64,000 nucleotides of DNA from the NCBI GenBank assembly GCA_025594325.1, contig JANHCV010000006.1, positions 1,674,001 to 1,738,000 of the forward strand. The letters run 5' to 3'. The notes under the pieces were generated by a model. The model was given only the letters and a program-made list of their open reading frames with translations, was not told the DNA's origin and made no database searches. Position 1 is the stretch's first letter. Each line of letters begins with the position of its first letter. Below are positions 654 through 10,068 of the stretch, one piece after another. The stretch comes from Blastocladiella emersonii ATCC 22665 (taxonomy: Eukaryota; Fungi; Blastocladiomycota). Made by a program: the position numbers and the translations under genes.

Positions 654-1233
654 CTGCGATGCCGGCGCGCGCGCTCGGCCTCCATCGCCGCCGACAGTGG
701 CACCTGCGCGAGGTCAGGACGACGAAGCGCCGCGCATCCCCCACCGCGCCGCGCCTCACACACATAGCCCGTGCGTGCGTCCGTGCCCACTCCGAGCGAG
801 CACTGCACACGCGCCTCCGCCCGCCCCGCTCGCGACCCGCGCCACCGCAGCGACCGCGACCGAGTGCCTGCCAGGGGTGGTGGTGCTACGAGCTGTTGCG
901 TCGGCCTGCTGCTGCCGTGTCATTCCGCCGCGAGCGTAGAGACGCGTCGCGCCACATTTTGTTCCGAAGCGCACGCGTCTCGCCGCGCCGCGCCCTTTCC
1001 GACCCGACCCCCCGCGCACTCGACCCCCAGCTCGGGCACACATGAATCAATGAAACGCAACTCGAGGCAACCGCACGGCCGAGCGCGTTCCACCACTCTC
1101 CCGCGACCTCTGACTCGAGCCGTCCGTATCGCGCCGCCGTCGGCCCCCGCACGAGTTGCGATCCTCACGCCCTTCCCCGCGCGCCCGTCTAGTACTCCTG
1201 CCCACATACTCACGCACTGAGCCCGCCGACGCC

Positions 1234-4200
1234 ATGGACTCCATCACCGAGGCGCCCACCGCGCCGGGATCGCCTCCGTCCCTGCCACCCGCGGATCCCC
1301 CACCCGCCACCACGTCTGCCGACCCTCCGCTCGCCGACTCGTTCCACGGAGACCAGCTCTCCTCGTCCGCGCCCGCCGCCTCCTCATCCACACCCGCGGC
1401 TGACCACCCGTCTGCCGGGTCGCTGACGGGTACGGGCACCAGCACCCCGCCGCGGTCCTCGCGCGACTCGCACCCGTCGAGCCGCACGGGCGCCGGCCCG
1501 CTTGGCGCGTCCACCACCACCCACTCGCTCCCGACCGGCAGCGCGTCGCCGTCCAGCAGCATCGGGCGCGGGAGCGGGAGCGCCGGGCGCGCGCTATCCA
1601 CGTCGTCGTCGACGTCGTCGTCGACGTCGTCGAGCCACGAGGCCGGGGCCGCCGCCGCGACTTCGGGTCCCGCGAGCCACCACGCGTCGAGCTCACCGCG
1701 CGCAATACGCAGCGCGGCCGTGACCACGACCAACGGCGACGAGCCCGACGCGCCCAGCGCCGGCGCCGCGTCGGGCGGCGAAACCCCGATCCAGCCCGCA
1801 ACCTCGACGGGCAAAGTGTTTGCGCCCGTCAAGACGATGCGCAGCCGGCGCATCTCGGAGCCGAACCGGCCCAGCAGCACCGCGCGCAGCTCGACGGTCC
1901 AAGGTGGCGGCGGGAGCACGTTCGGGTCGCCGCCGCCGCTCACGCCCATCGCCAGCACGCTCGACCGCCGCAAACATATCCACGGGTCCAATACCTCGCA
2001 CACGGGCGGTTTCGGGATCCACATGCACTCGCCCAGCGTGCCGTCGGGTCTCTCGCGCGTCCTGTACGACGGCGACGACGCGGTGGCGGGAGGAGCGTCG
2101 GGGAAGGGCGCCGGGGTGCCCGACGGCGCAAGGACACCGCCTGAGCCTGCCGCACCGCAGCCGAAAGCGGCGGCACCGAGTCCGGCGCCTGCGCCATCCA
2201 CGACCACGACGACAACGCCGGGCGGCGTCCGCGTCCCGCTATCCTCGGGCTCCGAGTCGTCCGGGTCCAACCTCCCGCGGTCCGACTCGCCGCGCGACTT
2301 TGACGCGCTGTTCAAGTCGCGCGACCTGCTTCCCCAACCGGGTTCCGACACCTCCGGCGCCAAGGACGACGAGGACCCCGGCGAGCGGCCATCGACGCGC
2401 GTCATCACCAAGCTGCTGGCGCTGTCCAAGAAGGCGCGGCGGTCGCGCGCGGGCTCAAAGTCGTCGCTCGACCAGGGCAACGGCCAGGGCACGCCCAACA
2501 GCGACGAGTCGCGGTCCACGTCCAACACCATGAAGCGGCCGACGTCCGCGCCGACCAAGACGCGCCAGCGCCGCGCGTCGTCCATCATCTCGGGGATCAT
2601 GGCGCCGATCGCCGCGGGCGGCGGCATCGGCACCGCCGGCGGGAACGGCGAGGAGTCAAGCGGCCAGCTCAGCGGCGACGGCAACGTGACGCGGTCGCGG
2701 TCGCGCACCAGCAGCATCGTGTCGTCGGCGGACGACGCGGGGCGGCGCGGGTCGCGGTCGAACGCCTCCACGACGGCGACCGGGACCCTCGTCGGCCGCA
2801 TCACGCTCGACCGCGAGGCGTCTATCGGCATGACGCCCGAGCGCGCCGCCGAGGCCGAGGCGATCCGCGAGCTCCTGCGCATCCCCGAGGCCGACATGGG
2901 GTCCAACCCGGACCTGCACGGCCGCGACGGCGGCGGCGGCGCGTCTGGCGCGAATATCTCCGTCAACCAGATCAACGGCGTCGTCAGCAACCTGTTCGGC
3001 GCGCGCCGCGCGCTCGACGACCCCGCGCTACGCAGCCTCCGCAACGCCCGACGGCGCGCTATGGGGAACAACGGGCCGGGCGGCGCGGCCGGGTCCGGGT
3101 TCGACATGTCATCGCCAAGCGGGAACGCCGTGTACGCGCCGGGTCCGCCGAGCGCGACCGCTGCAGCGGGCTCGCCGGTCCGCAGCCCGCCCATGAGCGG
3201 TATCGGCGGCGAGTTCACCGACTCGATGGGCGGCGGCGGCGGCGGTGGCGGCGGCGTGGACTCGTTCTCGAGCTCGGCGCACGCGAGCGGCCCGCTGCCG
3301 TACGACGCGACCAGTCGGACCGGCCCGCTCCCGTCAGCGCTGACTGCGAGCAGCAGCGGGACGGGGTCGGGCAACTCGCACGGTGCGGCGACGGCCGCGT
3401 GGCACCACCTGCGCGGGACGCCGACGGAGGCGTCGACGCACTCGCTGCCGTCGCGCGCCGCCATGGCGAGTAACTGGATCAAGTCAAACGCGGACCTCAA
3501 GGGCCACGGGTCCGGCACCATCGCGGTTTCGGGGACCGGGCGCACGGGCGGGGCCAGCTCGCCCGGCGGCGCGGCCAGCGTCGAGTCGTCGGCGCTCGCC
3601 GGGTCCGGCGGGATCCCGCCGCGGTACGGGTCCGGCCCGCGCGAGCGCGCGCTCACGTCCGTCATCGCCAAGCTCAAGAGCGGCGCGGCGGCCGCCAAGG
3701 AGCGCGGGTCCGCGTCGTCGCTCGCGCGCCAGTCGTCGGCGGGCGGGTCCGGGTCGATTTCGTCCAAGTCGAACGGTACGCGTCCCGCCACTCTTGCAAC
3801 GCGGCGAGTGAGAGAAATCTCACACCCGCGCACTGTAGCCCCGTCGATCCAGCAACTCGCGCACCCGCGACTGCCGACATGCACGACCGAGCCCGTTTCC
3901 GCGGATACCGCGGGCGGCGACGGCCTAGTCCAGTCGCCGTCGCTGCTCGCGACGCTCATCGACCCAGCGCTGCGGCGCAAATCGTCGTCGGCGTCGGCGG
4001 GCACCGTGCCGATCCACGGTTCGGCCGCGCTGCTCAACGCGTCGAGCGCCATGAGCGGGTCCGCGTCGGGGCTCCCGAAACCGATCATGCCGCACGCGCA
4101 GGGGAGCGCCGGCGGCGGGAGCAGCGCGGGCGGCGACGAGCCGCTGGTGCCGTCGATCCCGTCGCTGTTCGGGATCGATAACCCGACCATCAAGCTGCAG

Positions 4201-7200
4201 AGCCCCGACTCGGAGGATCCGGGCCACGGACACGGGATGGGCGGCGGGAGCAGCGGGGCCATGGGCGGCGGGCACGCGGGCGGCGGCGTTGGTGGTAGTG
4301 GTGGGGCACACGGCGCGCTCGGGCATGGAGGCGGCGGCAAGGCGGGTCTGCCGACGCACCGGTCGCAGGCGGCGTCGACGTACACGCTGACTCTGCCGTC
4401 GCTGCTGACGAGCAACCCGTTCAAGGCGCTGCGACTGTCGCCGGACCTCGAGGAGCTCTACCACATCTACTACTACCACCAGAACAAGGCCATCTTCCAG
4501 TCGCTCACGTTCCAGGTGATTGCGCTGTACGTCATGTACCTCGGGTGGAACCTGTTCCAGTACGCGCAGTTCTCGATGCTCATGGTGTGGGGCCCCGCGC
4601 TCGGCCTGCTCGTGACGCTGCTGGCGGGCGCGTGGCTGCACTTTGGGCAGGACGAGAGCGACCTCGTCTTCGCCAACGTGATCGTCGGCGTGTCGCTCGG
4701 CAGCGTGCTGCTGTCCAACAACCTGCTGCGCGATACGTGCTTCTTCACGTCGCCGTACTGGGACAACGTGATGCACCTCAACCAGCCGCTGTTCTGCGGG
4801 TTCATCTACTGGATGCTGCGCGCGCCGCTGCAGCACCGGTGCGCGATCGGCTGGGGGTTCACGGTGCTGCAGATCACCATCGACGTGACGGGCAGCTGCC
4901 ACCCGGCGGTCCTCGGCGCCAGCGCCATCGTGTACGTGGTCGTCAACATCATCGGCATGTTCTTCGCCTTCTTCTCCGAGGTCGCCAACCGCAACGCCTT
5001 CCTGCGCACCCGCGAGGTGTACAAGCACCAGGGCAAGCTGCACCTCGCCAAGGAGCAGTCCGAGGCGCTCCTGCGCATGGTGCTCCCCGCGCGCGTCATC
5101 GAGGACCTCAAGCGCGGCGTCGAGGGCGCCGGCTACCTCAGCGGACGCAGCACGTTCCAGGAGCTGCACAACGTGACGATCCTGTTCGCGGATATCGTCG
5201 GGTTCACCGAGTTCTCGTCTCGCGTCAGCGCGACCAAGCTCGTGCTCGTGCTCAGCGACATGTTCGCCGAGATCGACAACGTGTGCGAGTCGCTCGGCCT
5301 CGAGAAGATCAAGACGATCGGCGACTGCTACCAGTGCTGCGGCGGGGTGCCCGAGCCGGTCGCCGACGACGCCGAGGCGGCCGTCTGGGCCGAGCGCATG
5401 TGCATGCTGGGCGTCGAGATCATCCAGGGCGTCGCCAAGACGGCGCGCCGCATCAAGTACCCGCTGCGCGTGCGCGTCGGCATCCACACGGGGTCCGTTA
5501 TGGCCGGGATCATGGGCATCCACAAGCTCAAGTACGACGTGTGGTCCAAGGACGTCGACATCGCCTCGCAGATGGAGCAGTCGGCCACCGCCGATATCCC
5601 ACACCTCTCGGCCCCGACCCACGCCCTGCTCGTCGGCAACGCGTGTGATAACGGCATGACGTTCGCCCCCGCGCCCGACGTCGTGTACGAGGACCCCGAG
5701 CCCATCAAGACCTTCAACCTCGCGCGATACGTCTTCTCCAAGGTCGTCGACGGTAACTTTGTCACCATCACCCACCCGATGCCCGAGGCGCCGCGGTCCG
5801 CGACGGTGGCCATCGCGTCGGCCAAGATCGGCGGCGGCGAGCCCGTGGCGAGCCCCAAGAGCAGCGTGCCCAAGCTGCCCGCTGCTGCTGCTCCTGAGCA
5901 GGCCAAGAGTGAGCCATCGGCGACGGCGGCTCCCGCGACGAGCGACGCTGCAGCACCCGCGACTTCGACGACAACCGACGGTGCTCCCGCAGCAGCTCCC
6001 GCCGACCCCGCTGCCGCGACCACGACCACGACGGCCACGACGACGGCGAGTCCCGCGCCCGCCCGTGCGTCGGCGCCCATCGTCCCGCCAATATCCACGT
6101 CGCCGGCGCCCGTCGTGTTCCCGATCCCCGGTCCGGGCGAGGACCCGGGCACCGAGCTGACACCGAGCAACAAGCCGATCGCGGCGTTCCTGTCGGTGGC
6201 GAACGCGGACGCGCTGCTGCTCGACGACGCGCGCGCGCTGCGCGAGTCGGTGCAGGCGCAGCGCAAGCTGTTCCTCGACTTTGAGCGGCAGCTGCACTGG
6301 TTCTTTGGCACGTTCCGCGACCGCAAGCTCGAGGAGGAGTACAAGAACGACTACATGGAGCACCACGGCATGGACCTCATGTACGCCATGGCGCTGATGG
6401 TGGTCGTTAAGGTCATGTTCATCGCGGTGGCCGTGTTGGTGCTGGACGTGCCGGGCGCCGGGTACGCGGGCGACGTGAGCGCGGCAGTCATCACGGCTGG
6501 CGTCGTGGGCGTGGCGTCGGTGCGGTACCGGCAGTGCGCGGCGACCGAGGTCAAGGCCAACGACAAGAACGTGTCGGGCCTGTGGATCGGGTCGGAGCGC
6601 GACCTCGGGTCGACCGACTCGCTGACCAAGTTCACGCGGTGGCACCAGTGGCGGCCCAACACGCTCAGCCTGGTTGCGCTCGTGCTGTCGTTTGTCGGCG
6701 ACATTGTGCGGGTCCAGTTTGCGCGCACCGTGTACCCGTCGTACCAGCACGCAAGCGTGCTGATGCTGCAGTTCTCGACCACGCTGTTCGTCGGCCTGCG
6801 CACGCGCCAGCTGTCGCTGCTCGCCTTCTCGTGGATCCCGCTGTACGCGGTGCTGTACTTCGTCGGGATTTCGGCGACGCAGGGCGTCGAGCCGGCCATC
6901 ACGTCCGACATCTCGCAGCCCGCGCTCATGTTCATCATCACGATGCTCATGGTGTACACGACCAACCACGCCATGGACCTGCAGTTCCGGCGCAACTTCC
7001 AGATGAAGCGGTTCCTCGAGGGCAAGCTCAACGAGATCCGCATCGTGCAGAAGGACACGGAGCGGCTGCTGCTCAACATCTTCCCCCTGGACGTGGCGCA
7101 GCGGCTGCGCGTCAACCCGACGCTGCGCATCGCCGACGGGCTCGAGGACGTGTCGGTCATCTTCGGGTACATATCCAACTTCGACTCGCTCGACCTCCCG

Positions 7201-7942
7201 CCGGCGCTCGCCCTCAAGCTGCTCAACGAGATCATCTGCGACATTGACGAGCTGTGCCTGCGGCACCACGTCGAGAAGATCAAGACGATCGGGACCAAGT
7301 ACCTGGCGCTGACGAAAGACGACGTGGCGGGGACGTCGGTCCCGCACGCGGTGCGCATGGCTGAGTTCGCGCTCAACCTGCGCCAGGTCATCTCGTCGTA
7401 CAACGACCAGTTCTTCTCGCACATGTACTGCAACAACTTCATGGTGCGCATCGGGATCAACTGCGGGCCCGTCGTCGCGGGCGTGATCGGGACGTCTAAG
7501 TACTCGTTTGGTGCGCTCTTTCCTCGCCGTGGAACACTGGTGGCCCAGACACTGACCCGAGAACGCATGAACAGACGTGTGGGGCGATGCCGTCAACGTG
7601 TCCTCGCGCATGGAGTCGAACGGCATGGACAACATGATCCACGTGTCGCAGTCGACGTACGACCACCTGCACCCGCAGTACGAGTTCCAGTCGCGCGGCC
7701 AGGTCGCCATCAAGGGCAAGGGCATGATGTCGACCTACTTTTTGCTCGGCCGCCGCAAGCACGCGCAACCGCAGCATTACGGCGGTGGGGGAAGCGGCGG
7801 ATCGGGCACGGTGCCACCACCCGCGACGATCCACAAGACCGTGTCGACGGGCGCCGACGACGGCGGACCTCCGCCAGAACCAGTTTTGGCGGGAGCGGCA
7901 GCAGCAAGGGGAAGCGAAGCGGTGGCCACGGCGACTACGTAG
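1234..7942 (+). CDS. Class III transmembrane adenylyl cyclase with M1-C1-M2-C2 architecture (12 TM) and a low-complexity N-terminus of about 1050 aa
   Basis: ATG at 1234 in gccATGG context. C1 motifs: VTILFADIVGF, EKIKTIGDCY, RVGIHTG, KYDVWSKDVDIASQME. C2 motifs: EKIKTIGTKY, RIGINCGPVVAGVIG, and FDVWGDAVNVSSRMES, which is assembled only after removing intron 7511..7574. Two blocks of about 6 hydrophobic segments. Probable in-frame intron at 3776..3838. Confidence 0.92.
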
Positions 7943-8476
7943 TTGGGCACGACAATAGAGAAATTTTGATCTCCCACGCGGCCGCGAGCGGGCGCGGGAC
8001 ACGCGAGACACGCACGCGTCGCGATATCATGTGAGACGTGGGTGACTCGATGCAGGGAGGTGGGTGACCATCCGGGCCGGGCGACTACCTGGCTGGATGG
8101 GCGATTAATTTAAGGGGACGCGTAACCACGTGGCTCAGCAGCAGCGTCCAGTGACGCGTGGAGACGCGCAGCGGGAGGCAACCGCGCCGCGGCGGCTGCA
8201 CGCTGTGCTGTGCGGACAGCGAGCGAGAGAAGGCGCGTCGCAGCGACCACCACCGCGCGCCGCGCCGCTGCCCTGCCCTGCCCCGCCTCGCCCCCGACGC
8301 GCCGTGATCAGCGCGTCCAGCACTTGGAGCTTGCTGCAACGAGCCCGCGCTGCTCCGACTCGACGCACTCGCATCCACGCAACGTAACAACGCACCACAC
8401 CACACGCGCGCGACTCGCACCTCCCGCGCTCGTGTCCCGCTCATCCATCACTCTCGACTCCACCCCACCACCAACC

Positions 8477-10068
8477 ATGGCCGACAACGACGCGTCGACG
8501 GCGGCGACGCAGGCGGCCGCGAGCGACCCGGACGCGGCCAACGTGGTGCCGGCGGCGCACAAGTCGCAGTTCATGCAGTTCATCAAGACGCTGGCGTCGT
8601 TCACGGGCGACCTGTCGCAGCTGACGTGTCCGGCGTTCCTGCTGTCGGGCGTGTCGCTGCTCGAGTACAGCGCGCACTGGGCCGACCACCCGGAGCTGTT
8701 CGCGGCGATTGCGACCCACGGCGACCCGGCCGAGCGCATGGTCGCGGTCGCGCGCTGGTTCATCTCGACGCTGTACGGGTCGTTCCACTCGCGGTGCAAG
8801 ACGGGCACCGAGAAGAAGCCCTTCAACCCGGTCCTCGGCGAGCTCTTCTACTGCCACTGGCCCGCCCAGGGCGCCAGCGAGACCGCCGCCGCGTACCCGC
8901 GCACCGCCATGATCTGCGAGCAGGTCTCGCACCACCCGCCCGTCGGCGCCTTCTACATCGACAACGACAACAAGAACATTTTCCTCAACGGCCACTGTAC
9001 GCGCTTTCTCGTTTGCGGGACGTGTCTCGCGCGCATCTCACTGACCCCCGCGCGTCCGACTCGCTCGTAGGCGGCCAGAAGACCAAGTTCAAGACGGCGA
9101 GCATCAAGGTCGAGCAGACGGGCCGCGCCGTGCTGACCGTGTACCCGCCGGGCACCACGTCGGCGACGCCGGGCGCCGTGCCCGACGAGTACTTCATCAC
9201 GCTGCCCGAGATGACCCTGCGCGGCCTGCTGACGGGGCAGCTGTTTGTCGAGCTGCAGGGCAAGTCGTCCATCACGTCGTCGTCGGGCTTCCAGGCCACC
9301 TTCGAGTACCTGCCCAAGCCGTGGTTCGGCGGCGAGTACCACTGCGTCAAGGGCACCATTGCGCGGCTCGACCTCGACGCGTTCGCCTCGTCGAGCTCGG
9401 GCGACTCGCCCAAGGCCGCCAAAAAGTCGGGGAGCAAGAAGAACAAGGAGGAAAAGGACAAGAAGAAGCTCGCGGCGCTCGTCGCCGCGGCCGCCGCGTC
9501 GACCACGGGCTCGGCGACCCCGCTGTACTCGATCCAGGGCAAGTGGACCACGCAGTGCACCGTGACGCGGTACGCCGACGACGAGACCGAGGTGCTGTTC
9601 GACGCCGACGACCACCCGATGGTCGCCCCGCACGTCAAGCCGCTCGACCAGCAGACCGACCTCGAGTCGCGCAAGCTGTGGGGCAAGGTCGCCGCCTCGC
9701 TGACCGCCGGCGACTACTCGGCCGCCACCGCGGGCAAGTCCGCCATCGAGGACGCCCAGCGCGCGCTCCGCAAGCAGCGCGCCGAGGCCGGCGACCAGTG
9801 GGCGCCACGCCATTTCGTGTTCGTCAGCGACGCCGCCGCCGACGCGTCGTCGTCGGGCTCGGGCTCGGGCGGGTCCGCGCCCGTGTCCCCCGATACCGCG
9901 TCCGTCCACAGCGCACGCTCCGGCGACCTCTCGGCCAGCCGCTCGTCGCTCCGCAGCCTCGGCGCCGCGGCCGCCGCCGGCGGGAACACTGAGAGTCTCA
10001 TGGACGACGGCCTGTGGACGTTCGTCGAGCTCGCGGCCGCGGCCAACGCGTCGACGGCGTCGAGCTGA
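8477..10068 (+). CDS. KES1: Oxysterol-binding protein, Kes1/Osh4 type
   Basis: Motifs GDLSQLTCPAFLL, KKPFNPVLGELF and the OSBP signature EQVSHHPP. Removing intron 8997..9070 joins NGHC to GQKTKF. ESRKLW..V and K..IEDAQR occur near the C-terminus. Confidence 0.9.

What the first reader, a model, noticed from the sequence alone, without database searches (positions are those of the whole stretch)
1234..7942. Animal/Dictyostelium-type 12-TM adenylyl cyclase in a fungus-like genome
Seen in the sequence: 6 TM, C1, 6 TM, C2. C1 has both metal-binding aspartates (ADIVGF, GDCY). C2 has the ATP-specifying Lys (EKIKTIG) and Asp (FDVWG), plus the catalytic Asn and Arg (NVSSR); C2 itself lacks the metal aspartates, as expected for a pseudo-heterodimer. 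Established: Dikarya use the soluble Cyr1 LRR-PP2C-cyclase, while this architecture is that of mammalian AC1-9 and Dictyostelium ACA. Inference: an ancestral G-protein-regulated tmAC retained in a zoosporic fungus, with an extra disordered N-terminus of about 1000 aa that may be regulatory.
Basis: partly seen in the sequence, partly recalled or inferred. Interest (0 to 1): 0.75.

Follow-up and report, generated by a model that had tools for sequence, protein, structure and literature searches.

The report
Animal-type membrane adenylyl cyclase in Blastocladiella
This is a real, intact gene of the water fungus Blastocladiella emersonii for a 12-helix membrane adenylyl cyclase that shares its origin with the cAMP-making enzymes of animals; the reading is right, but cyclases of this kind had already been reported in chytrid-like fungi.

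Summary
The gene has two exons (1234-7510 and 7575-7942) and a 64-nt GT-AG intron. It encodes 2,214 aa: a disordered N-terminus of about 1,060 aa, then 6 TM, C1, a linker, 6 TM and C2.

C1 has both metal aspartates. C2 has the adenine-specifying Lys and Asp plus Asn, Arg and KGKG, so ATP is the predicted substrate. The intron splits the Asp codon, and sits at the same place and phase in B. britannica and Catenaria.

An AlphaFold model aligns over its whole length with cryo-EM structures of AC9, AC5 and AC8. In an ML tree, fungal C1 groups with holozoan C1 (100/95) and fungal C2 with holozoan C2 (100/100). An independent duplication in fungi is rejected (p-AU 2e-5). Orthologues occur in at least 8 blastoclad and about 15 chytrid species, and none appeared from non-flagellated fungi. 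No Cyr1-type gene was detected in this genome.

Novelty is low. Leonard et al. 2022 list such tandem-domain membrane cyclases in this genome, and Soanes & Talbot 2010 saw chytrid cyclase domains group with metazoan ones. G-protein regulation was not tested. The N-terminal extension is coding and carries conserved motif islands, three of them RRxS sites. The scan also flagged a second 12-TM cyclase elsewhere in this genome, probably the divergent paralogue I found on contig 15.

The parts
1234..7510 (+). Coding exon 1 (2,092 codons plus the first base of the Asp codon)
   Evidence: Open frame with the first ATG at 1234. GC3 is 0.83-0.98 in this frame. Orthologues are colinear.
1234..4419 (+). 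N-terminal extension of about 1,062 aa. It is low-complexity (63% Ser, Gly, Ala, Pro or Thr; 15% hydrophobic), with conserved short motifs including RRIS (about nt 1849), RRAS (about 2572) and RRKS (about 3976).
   Evidence: Composition. It is colinear with B. britannica (E 1e-22) and with an unannotated upstream ORF of Catenaria (E 4e-52). RRxS sites are listed.
4441..4965 (+). First hexahelical membrane domain (TM1-TM6)
   Evidence: AlphaFold helices 8-47, 49-75, 79-102, 116-134, 137-157 and 162 onward. Hydropathy peaks. A weak AC_N hit of 27.5 bits is below the 30.9 cut-off.
4966..5121 (+). Helical segment that continues TM6 towards C1 (the coiled-coil or transducer region of tmACs)
   Evidence: Model helix 162-219 runs on from TM6, followed by helix 224-234. 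This region aligns with the same region of AC8 in phmmer.
5158..5775 (+). Catalytic domain C1, with metal-binding Asp1320 (5191-5193) and Asp1364 (5323-5325). It lacks the catalytic Asn/Arg pair (DIASQ).
   Evidence: Pfam PF00211. Motif table. Coordinates. Model pLDDT is about 90.
5794..6216 (+). Disordered Ala/Pro/Thr-rich linker between C1 and TM7
   Evidence: Model residues 459-599 have pLDDT below 50. Sequence.
6322..6972 (+). Second hexahelical membrane domain (TM7-TM12)
   Evidence: Model helices 635-674, 679-715, 733-767, 773-791, 796-821 and 829 onward. Hydropathy. Its only paralogous match in the genome is the contig-15 cyclase.
6973..7113 (+). Helical segment that continues TM12 towards C2
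   Evidence: Model helix 829-887, followed by helix 890-898.
7132..7510 (+). Catalytic domain C2, first part. It has Lys2017 (7282-7284), which specifies adenine, and Tyr1979 and Thr2021 in place of the metal aspartates.
7511..7574 (+). Intron: 64 nt, GT..AG, phase 1, inside the Asp codon (G|AC)
   Evidence: Sequence. Frame and GC3 shift. An intron sits at the identical position and phase in B. britannica (59 nt) and Catenaria (about 74 nt). Orthologue proteins read KYSF-DVWGD or KFSF-DIWGD across the junction.
7575..7759 (+). Catalytic domain C2, second part: rest of the Asp codon, Asn (7595-7597), Arg (7607-7609) and the KGKG Lys (7712-7714)
   Evidence: Pfam profile positions 125-182..
7760..7942 (+). 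Short Gly/Pro-rich C-terminal tail and the TAG stop (7940-7942)

Best explanation
The region holds an intact two-exon gene of Blastocladiella emersonii. It encodes a 2,214-aa class III (IIIa-type) pseudo-heterodimeric membrane adenylyl cyclase that is orthologous to animal AC1-9.

Shown here. The chain runs: disordered N-terminus, 6 TM, helical connector, C1, disordered linker, 6 TM, helical connector, C2. C1 supplies the two metal-binding aspartates. C2 supplies the adenine-selecting Lys and Asp, the transition-state Asn and Arg, and the KGKG Lys. The complementary positions in each domain are degenerate, so one composite ATP site should form at the C1/C2 interface, beside a dead pseudo-site as in mammalian enzymes.

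Inferred. The enzyme makes cAMP from ATP at a membrane. The gene descends vertically from a tmAC of the last common ancestor of fungi and animals. It persists in flagellated (zoosporic) fungi, while other fungi rely on the unrelated-architecture Cyr1. In B. emersonii, where I detected no Cyr1-type gene, it is the best candidate for the particulate adenylate cyclase activity that rises during zoospore formation (Gomes et al. 1978, as cited in PMC9730499).

More speculative. Control acts through the N-terminal region of about 1,060 aa. Its short motifs are conserved across genera, and three of them are RRxS protein-kinase-A-type sites, which suggests feedback phosphorylation. Control by a G protein or through the membrane domains remains possible but has no evidence here.
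For: Gene structure. The intron position and phase are conserved in two other genera.

Domains: Pfam finds two PF00211 domains.

Solved relatives: AC8 2e-60, AC9 7e-59 and AC5 5e-57, with C1 matching C1, C2 matching C2, and TM6 plus connector also aligned.

Fold: the AlphaFold model has pLDDT 74 and pTM 0.64, with 6+6 helices. Foldseek gives E 1e-33 to 1e-32 against full-length AC9, AC5 and AC8, with TM 0.59-0.66 by query and 0.68-0.75 by target.

Catalytic residues: table. The genome's other cyclases carry YKVETIG (Glu, the guanylyl type), whereas this gene has EKIKTIG (Lys).

Phylogeny: in the careful ML tree, fungi C1 + Holozoa C1 has support 100/95, fungi C2 + Holozoa C2 has 100/100, and the other B. 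emersonii cyclases form a separate clade at 100/97. The same topology appears in the 116-row quick tree. The AU test rejects a single fungal C1+C2 clade (delta lnL 66, p 1.9e-5).

Distribution: Blastocladiella (2 species), Allomyces (3), Catenaria, Paraphysoderma, Sorochytrium, and about 15 chytrids including Spizellomyces and Batrachochytrium.

No Cyr1-type gene: no PP2C or LRR_8 match lies within 30 kb of any of the 22 PF00211 matches.

N-terminus: coding by GC3 and conserved in motif islands.
Against: There are no expression data. No RNA run was listed, so transcription, splicing and the 5' end rest on comparative evidence alone. Enzyme activity and substrate preference are predicted, not measured. 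The membrane helices of the model have moderate confidence (pLDDT about 75-85, with loops below 60), and the alignment behind it had only 50 sequences. The Pfam AC_N match is below its cut-off. The absence of Cyr1 rests on six-frame domain scans that score only the best candidates, and the PF08509 scan was uninformative. The link to the zoospore activity of 1978 is circumstantial, because a second divergent tmAC paralogue (contig 15) and other cyclases exist. RRxS sites are short and common in Arg/Ser-rich disordered sequence, so their conservation suggests phosphorylation but does not prove it.
Confidence: 0.85

Rival explanations
1. The architecture arose independently in fungi, by a separate duplication and fusion of a bacterial-like 6TM cyclase, or was acquired from bacteria. 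This is what the 'bacterial-like / Prok-like' placement in Leonard et al. 2022 might suggest.
For: Leonard et al. place the predicted B. emersonii ACs in a 'Prok/Prok-like cyclases' cluster. Bacterial single-domain cyclases are the next-best hits after eukaryotic tmACs, and C1 keeps the bacterial-looking EKIKTIG motif.
Against: Fungal C1 and C2 each group with the matching holozoan domain at 100/95 and 100/100. Forcing fungal C1+C2 together costs 66 lnL units (p-AU 1.9e-5). Full-length hits to animal tmACs score about 200-230 bits, against about 135 bits or less for bacteria. The TM6-connector region also aligns with AC8.
Confidence: 0.03
2. Zoosporic fungi acquired the gene by horizontal transfer from a holozoan, rather than inheriting it vertically.
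For: The distribution within fungi is patchy: it is found only in Blastocladiomycota and Chytridiomycota. Chytrid 'adenylate cyclase' has been listed among HGT candidates before, although with a bacterial donor and probably for a different gene (PMC5005798).
Against: In the C1 tree the fungal clade (100/99) is sister to all sampled Holozoa (97/93), not nested within them. In the C2 tree the fungi sit, with weak support (83/61), beside the two unicellular holozoans. Within fungi, chytrids and blastoclads separate as in the species tree. A later preprint found the chytrid cyclase candidate widespread across chytrids and did not accept it as HGT.
Confidence: 0.05
3. The enzyme is a guanylyl or dual-specificity cyclase, or a catalytically silent scaffold, rather than an adenylyl cyclase.
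For: B. emersonii has many guanylyl cyclases and strong cGMP signalling (PMC9730499). Specificity residues do not always predict substrate. Nothing was measured.
Against: C2 has Lys and Asp at the positions where the genome's own GCs have Glu (YKVETIG), with Cys at the second position (the MPRYCL motif in PMC9730499). All seven canonical catalytic residues are present and are conserved at 65-75% overall identity across genera.
Confidence: 0.05
4. The N-terminal region of about 1,060 aa is not part of the protein. On this view translation starts near TM1, as in the deposited Catenaria model of 1,121 aa, and the long upstream ORF is a by-product of 70% GC.
For: The Catenaria (P0001) and Polychytrium (1,076 aa) models lack an extension. 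High-GC DNA here yields chance ORFs of more than 1,100 aa on the antisense strand.
Against: GC3 of 0.83-0.98 in frame runs through the whole region. The B. britannica model has an extension of the same length with the same MDS start and colinear motif islands. The Catenaria locus has an in-frame upstream ORF of 973 codons that is homologous to it at E 4e-52, so the short Catenaria model is more likely truncated. Allomyces, Sorochytrium, Paraphysoderma and most chytrid orthologues are 1,540-1,950 aa long.
Confidence: 0.07

Closest known systems
Mammalian/metazoan membrane adenylyl cyclases AC1-AC9 (class IIIa; cryo-EM structures 6R3Q, 8BUZ, 8SL3)
   Same: The domain order is the same: 6TM, helical connector, C1, 6TM, helical connector, C2. 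The catalytic residues are divided in the same complementary way between C1 and C2, with Lys/Asp for ATP. The predicted fold matches over the whole chain. C1 and C2 are each orthologous to the animal domains in the tree.
   Different: It has an N-terminal disordered extension of about 1,060 aa, against tens to about 200 aa in animals. It branches outside all animal isoform groups, so it is not a 'type 6' or 'type 1' as automatic names say. C1 keeps EKIKTIG where most animal isoforms sampled have RIKILG. The position of the forskolin-contacting Ser of AC2 (my recollection of the structure literature) is Thr. Regulation by Gs, Gi, Ca/CaM or forskolin is unknown, and a Gs orthologue is not expected in fungi (PMC3971589).
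Predicted membrane ACs of B. emersonii, 'groups 6 and 7' (BeAC6-7) of Leonard et al. 2022, Genome Biol Evol 14:evac157
   Same: It is almost certainly one of these genes: same genome (21 contigs), tandem cyclase domains, multiple TM regions and predicted AC motifs.
   Different: The paper places them among 'bacterial-like' cyclases and does not call them orthologues of animal tmACs. My trees place both domains with holozoan tmACs. Which group number this gene carries could not be checked, because the supplement is not held.
Chytrid cyclases noted by Soanes & Talbot 2010 (PLoS One 5:e12725)
   Same: That study found that Batrachochytrium has no LRR-type (Cyr1) cyclase and that its cyclase domains group with metazoan and amoebozoan sequences. 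This is the same conclusion in outline. The Batrachochytrium orthologue is among my hits.
   Different: That was a domain-level tree of one chytrid. It gave no C1/C2 orthology, no 12-TM fold, no blastoclad data and no N-terminal region.
Fungal Cyr1/CyaA-type adenylyl cyclase (RA-LRR-PP2C-cyclase) of Dikarya and Mucoromycota
   Same: Both have a class III catalytic domain and produce cAMP in fungi.
   Different: Cyr1 has a single catalytic domain that homodimerises, no TM helices, and LRR and PP2C modules. None of these modules occurs in this protein or next to any cyclase domain of this genome.
Dictyostelium ACA (12-TM adenylyl cyclase)
   Same: By established knowledge it has the same 2 x (6TM + cyclase) layout and produces cAMP during development.
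   Different: Its relationship was not tested here, because no ACA sequence was available to the tools. ACA is activated through G-beta-gamma, CRAC and TORC2 rather than Gs (my own knowledge), which shows that this architecture does not by itself imply Gs control.

Membership tests
Class IIIa pseudo-heterodimeric membrane adenylyl cyclase (animal AC1-9 type) | Two class III cyclase homology domains (C1, C2) in one polypeptide | tested here: met
   PF00211 occurs twice in exon 1 (E 3e-66), and the exon-2 piece completes the second domain.
Class IIIa pseudo-heterodimeric membrane adenylyl cyclase (animal AC1-9 type) | Two hexahelical membrane domains in the order TM1-6, C1, TM7-12, C2 | tested here: met
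   The AlphaFold model has six helices before each catalytic domain. It aligns over the whole chain with AC9, AC5 and AC8 at TM 0.59-0.75. Simple hydropathy alone finds only 4-5 clear peaks per block.
Class IIIa pseudo-heterodimeric membrane adenylyl cyclase (animal AC1-9 type) | Helical connector (coiled coil / transducer element) running from TM6 and TM12 into C1 and C2 | tested here: met
   Model helices 162-219 and 829-887 are continuous with TM6 and TM12. phmmer aligns this stretch with AC8 residues 279-380. The Pfam AC_N match covering it scores 27.5 bits, below the 30.9 cut-off.
Class IIIa pseudo-heterodimeric membrane adenylyl cyclase (animal AC1-9 type) | Complementary active site: metal Asp pair only in C1; adenine Lys/Asp, Asn/Arg and the phosphate-binding Lys only in C2 | tested here: met
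   C1 has D1320 and D1364 and reads DIASQ where C2 has NVSSR. C2 has Y1979 and T2021 at the metal positions, plus K2017, the spliced Asp, Asn, Arg and KGKG.
Class IIIa pseudo-heterodimeric membrane adenylyl cyclase (animal AC1-9 type) | C1 and C2 each orthologous to the corresponding animal domain (one ancestral duplication) | tested here: met
   Careful ML tree: 100/95 for C1 and 100/100 for C2. AU test p 1.9e-5 against a fungal-only duplication.
Class IIIa pseudo-heterodimeric membrane adenylyl cyclase (animal AC1-9 type) | Measured conversion of ATP to cAMP; stimulation by G-alpha-s and (except AC9) forskolin | not testable with these tools
   This needs expression and an enzyme assay. G-alpha-s is reported as holozoan-only (PMC3971589). 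Three of about nine G-alpha genes here are closest to Gi/o/t.
Fungal Cyr1-type adenylyl cyclase | RA / LRR / PP2C modules N-terminal to a single cyclase domain; no TM helices | tested here: not met
   Pfam finds only PF00211 and a weak AC_N in the protein. It has twelve predicted TM helices.
Guanylyl cyclases (receptor, soluble or rhodopsin-fused) | Glu and Cys (or Ser/Thr) at the two base-specifying positions | tested here: not met
   This gene has Lys and Asp at those positions. The genome's other cyclase domains have Glu at the first position (YKVETIG) and form a separate clade.
Dictyostelium ACA-type 12-TM cyclase | Orthology with ACA | not tested
   No ACA sequence was returned by any search, so only the shared layout (established knowledge) can be stated.

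The most novel reading that the evidence does not exclude
The animal-type tmAC was the cAMP source of the flagellated ancestor of fungi and animals. In fungi it survives only where zoospores survive, and it was replaced by Cyr1 when the flagellum was lost. In blastoclads it is steered not by a Gs-like protein but by a lineage-specific N-terminal disordered region of about 1,000 aa. The conserved RRxS and other short motifs of this region would make it a kinase-gated (PKA-feedback) generator of the transient cAMP pulse at zoospore formation and germination.
Probability: 0.25. Interest if true: 0.5.

Novelty: already known. Interest (0 to 1): 0.3.

Why it matters
The result fixes the C1/C2 duplication-fusion that created membrane adenylyl cyclases to before the split of fungi and animals. 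It also shows that a genetically simpler, unicellular, Cyr1-free organism carries a single well-conserved orthologue. That could serve tmAC research, where the role of the two membrane domains is an open question, and zoospore biology, where cAMP controls sporulation and germination in Blastocladiella.

It also corrects three small points in public data. The 'bacterial-like' label for these genes is misleading. The isoform names 'type 1/5/6' given to fungal orthologues are not phylogenetically meaningful. The Catenaria gene model is probably missing about 970 N-terminal codons.

The core fact is not new. Membrane cyclases with tandem domains in this genome, and chytrid cyclases grouping with metazoan ones in the absence of Cyr1, are both already published. 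A 2022 review of tmAC evolution (PMC9552081) does not mention fungi at all, so the point seems to be under-appreciated rather than unknown.

Tried and rejected
- RNA evidence: the look-up of sequencing runs listed no RNA run. Splicing rests on comparative evidence.
- The joined (spliced) protein was never searched or folded. Exon 1 and exon 2 were analysed by reference separately. In the trees the B. emersonii C2 row is the exon-1 part only, and complete C2 domains come from orthologues.
- The 116-row careful tree did not finish in two 300-s runs. I report its quick version and a finished careful tree of 65 rows. Rows left out of the reduced set: three of the four Allomyces rows, most 'Unk' metagenomic rows including the long-branched P0017, several animal and bacterial rows, and the long-branched B. 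emersonii domains C6 and C11b.
- Classifying the genome's G-alpha genes through PDB searches is inefficient, because the top 60 rows fill up with Gi entries. Only three of about nine were done, all closest to Gi/o/t. No statement about the other six is possible.
- The PF08509 scan (Cyr1 G-alpha-binding domain) found nothing, but its controls rang nowhere, so it is uninformative.
- The TM blocks of this protein were searched against its own genome, to test a link with the 'cyclase-less tmAC anchor' families that earlier notes of the scan describe. TM1-6 matches nothing else, and TM7-12 matches only the contig-15 paralogue. No sequence-level link was found.
- Dictyostelium ACA and other non-opisthokont tmACs could not be obtained, so the 'Dictyostelium-type' part of the title is untested.
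- The supplement of Leonard et al. is not held, so the gene's published identifier and group number could not be confirmed.


Full report
**What is in the sequence**

The window has 63-75% GC in 500-base windows over its first 12 kb and carries a 2,292-codon ORF at 1156-8034. The first in-frame ATG is at 1234.

The frame reads through a low-complexity region of about 1,060 aa, which is 63% Ser, Gly, Ala, Pro or Thr. After that come hydrophobic segments and two cyclase domains.

After KYSF at 7498-7509 the homology stops. It resumes in another frame at 7577 with VWGDAVNVSSRMES. The 64 bases between them start with GT and end with AG, and have a CTGAC about 20 nt before the AG. Removing them rebuilds a GAC (Asp) codon from G7510 and AC7575-7576. 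Exon 2 ends at the TAG at 7940-7942. The predicted product is 2,214 aa.

Third-position GC is 0.83-0.98 in the exon-1 frame from about 1200 to 7500. It then jumps to the exon-2 frame. So the whole of exon 1, including the N-terminal region, behaves as coding sequence. The two antisense ORFs of more than 1,100 codons are most simply a by-product of the high GC content.

**The intron is real**

No RNA run was listed, so I used comparative evidence instead. The orthologous proteins read straight across the junction: KYSFDVWGD in Catenaria and KFSFDIWGD in Paraphysoderma.

Mapping the B. britannica and Catenaria proteins onto their own contigs shows an intron at exactly this position and phase, of 59 and about 74 nt. 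Those two genera also have an intron in C1, after KLVLVL, which B. emersonii lacks.

**Which organism, and what is already published**

An earlier follow-up note of this scan names the genome as Blastocladiella emersonii. This fits the 21 contigs of the assembly by Leonard et al. 2022 and the 75%-identical B. britannica orthologue.

That paper lists 17 genes with PF00211. [quoted passage not shown] It places them among "bacterial-like" sequences and links them to the membrane AC activity that rises during zoospore formation.

My six-frame scan finds 22 matches at 16 loci, so this gene is almost certainly among their 17. The supplement that would give its identifier is not held.

Soanes & Talbot 2010 had already reported two things. 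Batrachochytrium lacks the LRR-type cyclase of other fungi. [quoted passage not shown]

A 2022 review on tmAC evolution does not mention fungi, Dictyostelium or unicellular relatives.

**Identity**

Against solved structures, the best matches are full-length AC8 (2e-60), AC9 and AC5. C1 aligns to C1 and C2 to C2, and the TM6-connector stretch also aligns.

The word-based protein search finds these relatives, in order of score:
- Catenaria: 65% identity over the whole core.
- B. britannica: 75% identity.
- Allomyces (four proteins from three species), Paraphysoderma and Sorochytrium.
- The chytrids Nowakowskiella and Quaeritorhiza.
- The unicellular holozoans Chromosphaera and Pigoraptor.
- Animal AC9, AC1, AC2, AC3 and AC8.
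- Bacterial single-domain cyclases, well below all of these.

A search from the Nowakowskiella protein adds Spizellomyces, two Batrachochytrium species, two Geranomyces species, Polychytrium, Phlyctochytrium, Fimicolochytrium, Thoreauomyces, Borealophlyctis, Clydaea and Polyrhizophydium. No protein of a non-flagellated fungus scored above the animal hits. This is suggestive only, because the lists are capped.

**Topology and fold**

An AlphaFold model of the exon-1 core (1,030 aa, 50-row alignment) has pLDDT 74 and pTM 0.64. Its layout is as follows:
- Six helices, with the sixth running on as a long connector into C1.
- A disordered linker of about 140 aa.
- Six more helices, with the twelfth running on into C2.

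Foldseek aligns the whole chain with cryo-EM structures of AC9, AC5 and AC8. E-values are 1e-33 to 1e-32, TM is 0.59-0.66 by query and 0.68-0.75 by target. The 6+6 topology is therefore supported. A plain hydropathy scan alone would have left it uncertain.

**Catalytic residues and substrate**

- C1 has Asp1320 and Asp1364, the metal ligands, but reads DIASQ where a complete site needs Asn and Arg.
- C2 has Tyr and Thr at the metal positions. It has Lys2017, the spliced Asp, Asn, Arg and KGKG.

This is the division of labour seen in mammalian tmACs: one ATP site and one degenerate site. The other cyclase domains of the same genome carry YKVETIG, with Glu, at the Lys position. They form their own clade, consistent with their published assignment as guanylyl cyclases. 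ATP is therefore the predicted substrate, but nothing was measured.

**Ancestry**

I extracted all cyclase domains with an HMM and built trees. The quick tree of 116 rows and the finished careful tree of 65 rows (LG+C20+F+G4, 189 columns) agree:

| Clade | Support (UFBoot/SH-aLRT) |
|---|---|
| Fungal C1 + holozoan C1 | 100/95 |
| Fungal C2 + holozoan C2 | 100/100 |
| Fungal C1 alone | 100/99 |
| Fungal C2 alone | 100/99 |
| Holozoan C1 alone | 97/93 |
| Other B. emersonii cyclases (separate clade) | 100/97 |

Within the fungal C1 clade, the two chytrids group together (100/97) and the blastoclads group together (99/89); in C2 the one chytrid row is unresolved at the base. Forcing all fungal C1 and C2 domains into one clade, which would mean an independent duplication, costs 66 log-likelihood units (p-AU 1.9e-5).

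The simplest reading is a single duplication-fusion before the fungus-animal split, followed by vertical descent and then loss in the fungi that rely on Cyr1. The 'bacterial-like' label in the genome paper is thus too coarse for this gene. Dictyostelium ACA was not available, so nothing can be said about a date earlier than the opisthokont ancestor.

**No Cyr1 in this genome**

The five PP2C matches and 54 LRR_8 matches in the genome all lie more than 30 kb from any cyclase domain. The weakly matching cyclase on contig 1 is a GAF-PAS-cyclase. A scan for the Cyr1 G-alpha-binding domain was uninformative.

**The N-terminal region**

This region is not junk. B. britannica has an extension of the same length that also starts MDS and is colinear with it.

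The Catenaria protein in GenBank is only 1,121 aa. Its locus, however, has an in-frame upstream ORF of 973 codons that aligns with the B. emersonii region at E 4e-52.

Identity is concentrated in about a dozen islands of 8-25 residues. Examples are MRSRRISEPN, HSPSxPSGLSRVL, RVIxKLLALSK, RRASSI, GVVSNLFGxRRALDDPxLRSLRNARRR, RRKSSSASA and PSIPSLxG. They are separated by unalignable low-complexity sequence.

Three of the islands are RRxS sites. This is the pattern of a disordered regulatory region with short linear motifs. Feedback phosphorylation by PKA is a reasonable hypothesis, not a result.

**Regulation by G proteins**

This was not tested. The genome has about nine G-alpha genes. The three I classified are closest to Gi/o/t. 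Published work assigns Gs to Holozoa only. The C2 alpha-2 helix pattern LLNEIIxDxDEL is shared by fungal and animal C2 domains, but this only restates their common origin.

**Surroundings**

- Downstream lies an oxysterol-binding-protein gene (8626-10068).
- A second tmAC-like gene lies on contig 15. It is intron-rich and long-branched. Its TM7-12 block is 24% identical to this one, and its C2 piece falls inside the tmAC C2 clade. It is probably the other 12-TM cyclase that the scan flagged on another contig.
- The 'cyclase-less anchor' families that the scan also noted show no sequence similarity to this gene's membrane domains.

**Verdict**

The identification as an animal-type membrane adenylyl cyclase inherited from the common ancestor is supported. 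G-protein control and the Dictyostelium link are untested.

The finding is essentially already in the literature and in database annotations, so interest is modest. The additions made here are:
- Orthology shown domain by domain.
- The whole-chain fold match.
- The conserved intron.
- The conserved N-terminal motif region, together with the likely truncated Catenaria gene model.

Noticed in passing
L033:1082-4000 (Catenaria anguillulae contig MCFL01000087.1): The deposited Catenaria orthologue (1,121 aa) probably lacks about 970 N-terminal codons. An in-frame upstream ORF is homologous to the B. emersonii N-terminal region (E 4e-52) and shares the same motif islands.
   Followed up: yes
G000:C15:1789456-1792451 (L018): A second, divergent and intron-rich two-domain membrane cyclase. 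It has a weak AC_N hit. Its TM7-12 block is 24% identical to this gene's, and its C2 piece sits inside the tmAC C2 clade on a long branch. It is probably the other 'group 6/7' AC of Leonard et al., and the other 12-TM cyclase flagged by the scan.
   Followed up: partly
G000:C1:2435553-2438962 (L019): A GAF-PAS-cyclase gene (GAF E 2e-27) with a weakly matching cyclase domain split by an intron. It is a soluble sensor-type cyclase, not Cyr1-like.
   Followed up: partly
window 8626-10068 (+): The gene downstream of the cyclase encodes an oxysterol-binding-protein-family protein (PF01237, E 1e-22).
   Followed up: partly
It has no Pfam match at E <= 0.1. Whether it is functionally linked to the cyclase is unknown.
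   Followed up: partly
window 1047-4424 (-) and 3925-7725 (-): Antisense ORFs of 1,125 and 1,266 codons overlap the cyclase gene. With 70% GC, and GC3 peaking in the sense frame, they are probably chance ORFs. This is a warning for ORF-based annotation of this genome.
   Followed up: partly
L032:8027-8096 and L033:4850-4928: B. britannica and Catenaria share an intron in C1 (after KLVLVL) that is absent from B. emersonii, where the frame is continuous. This points to a lineage-specific intron loss.
   Followed up: partly
P0017 (metagenomic protein, 1,285 aa): An unnamed environmental two-domain cyclase groups with the fungal tmAC clade on long branches in both the C1 and C2 trees. It may come from an unsampled zoosporic fungal lineage.
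   Followed up: no
P0004/P0005/P0037 (EukProt transcriptome proteins, about 1,000 aa): These are two-domain eukaryotic cyclases whose two domains do not fall in the matching tmAC C1 and C2 clades: the first domain lies outside both, and the second sits beside the tmAC C1 clade at 85/84. They may be an independently duplicated lineage of unknown organism.
   Followed up: no
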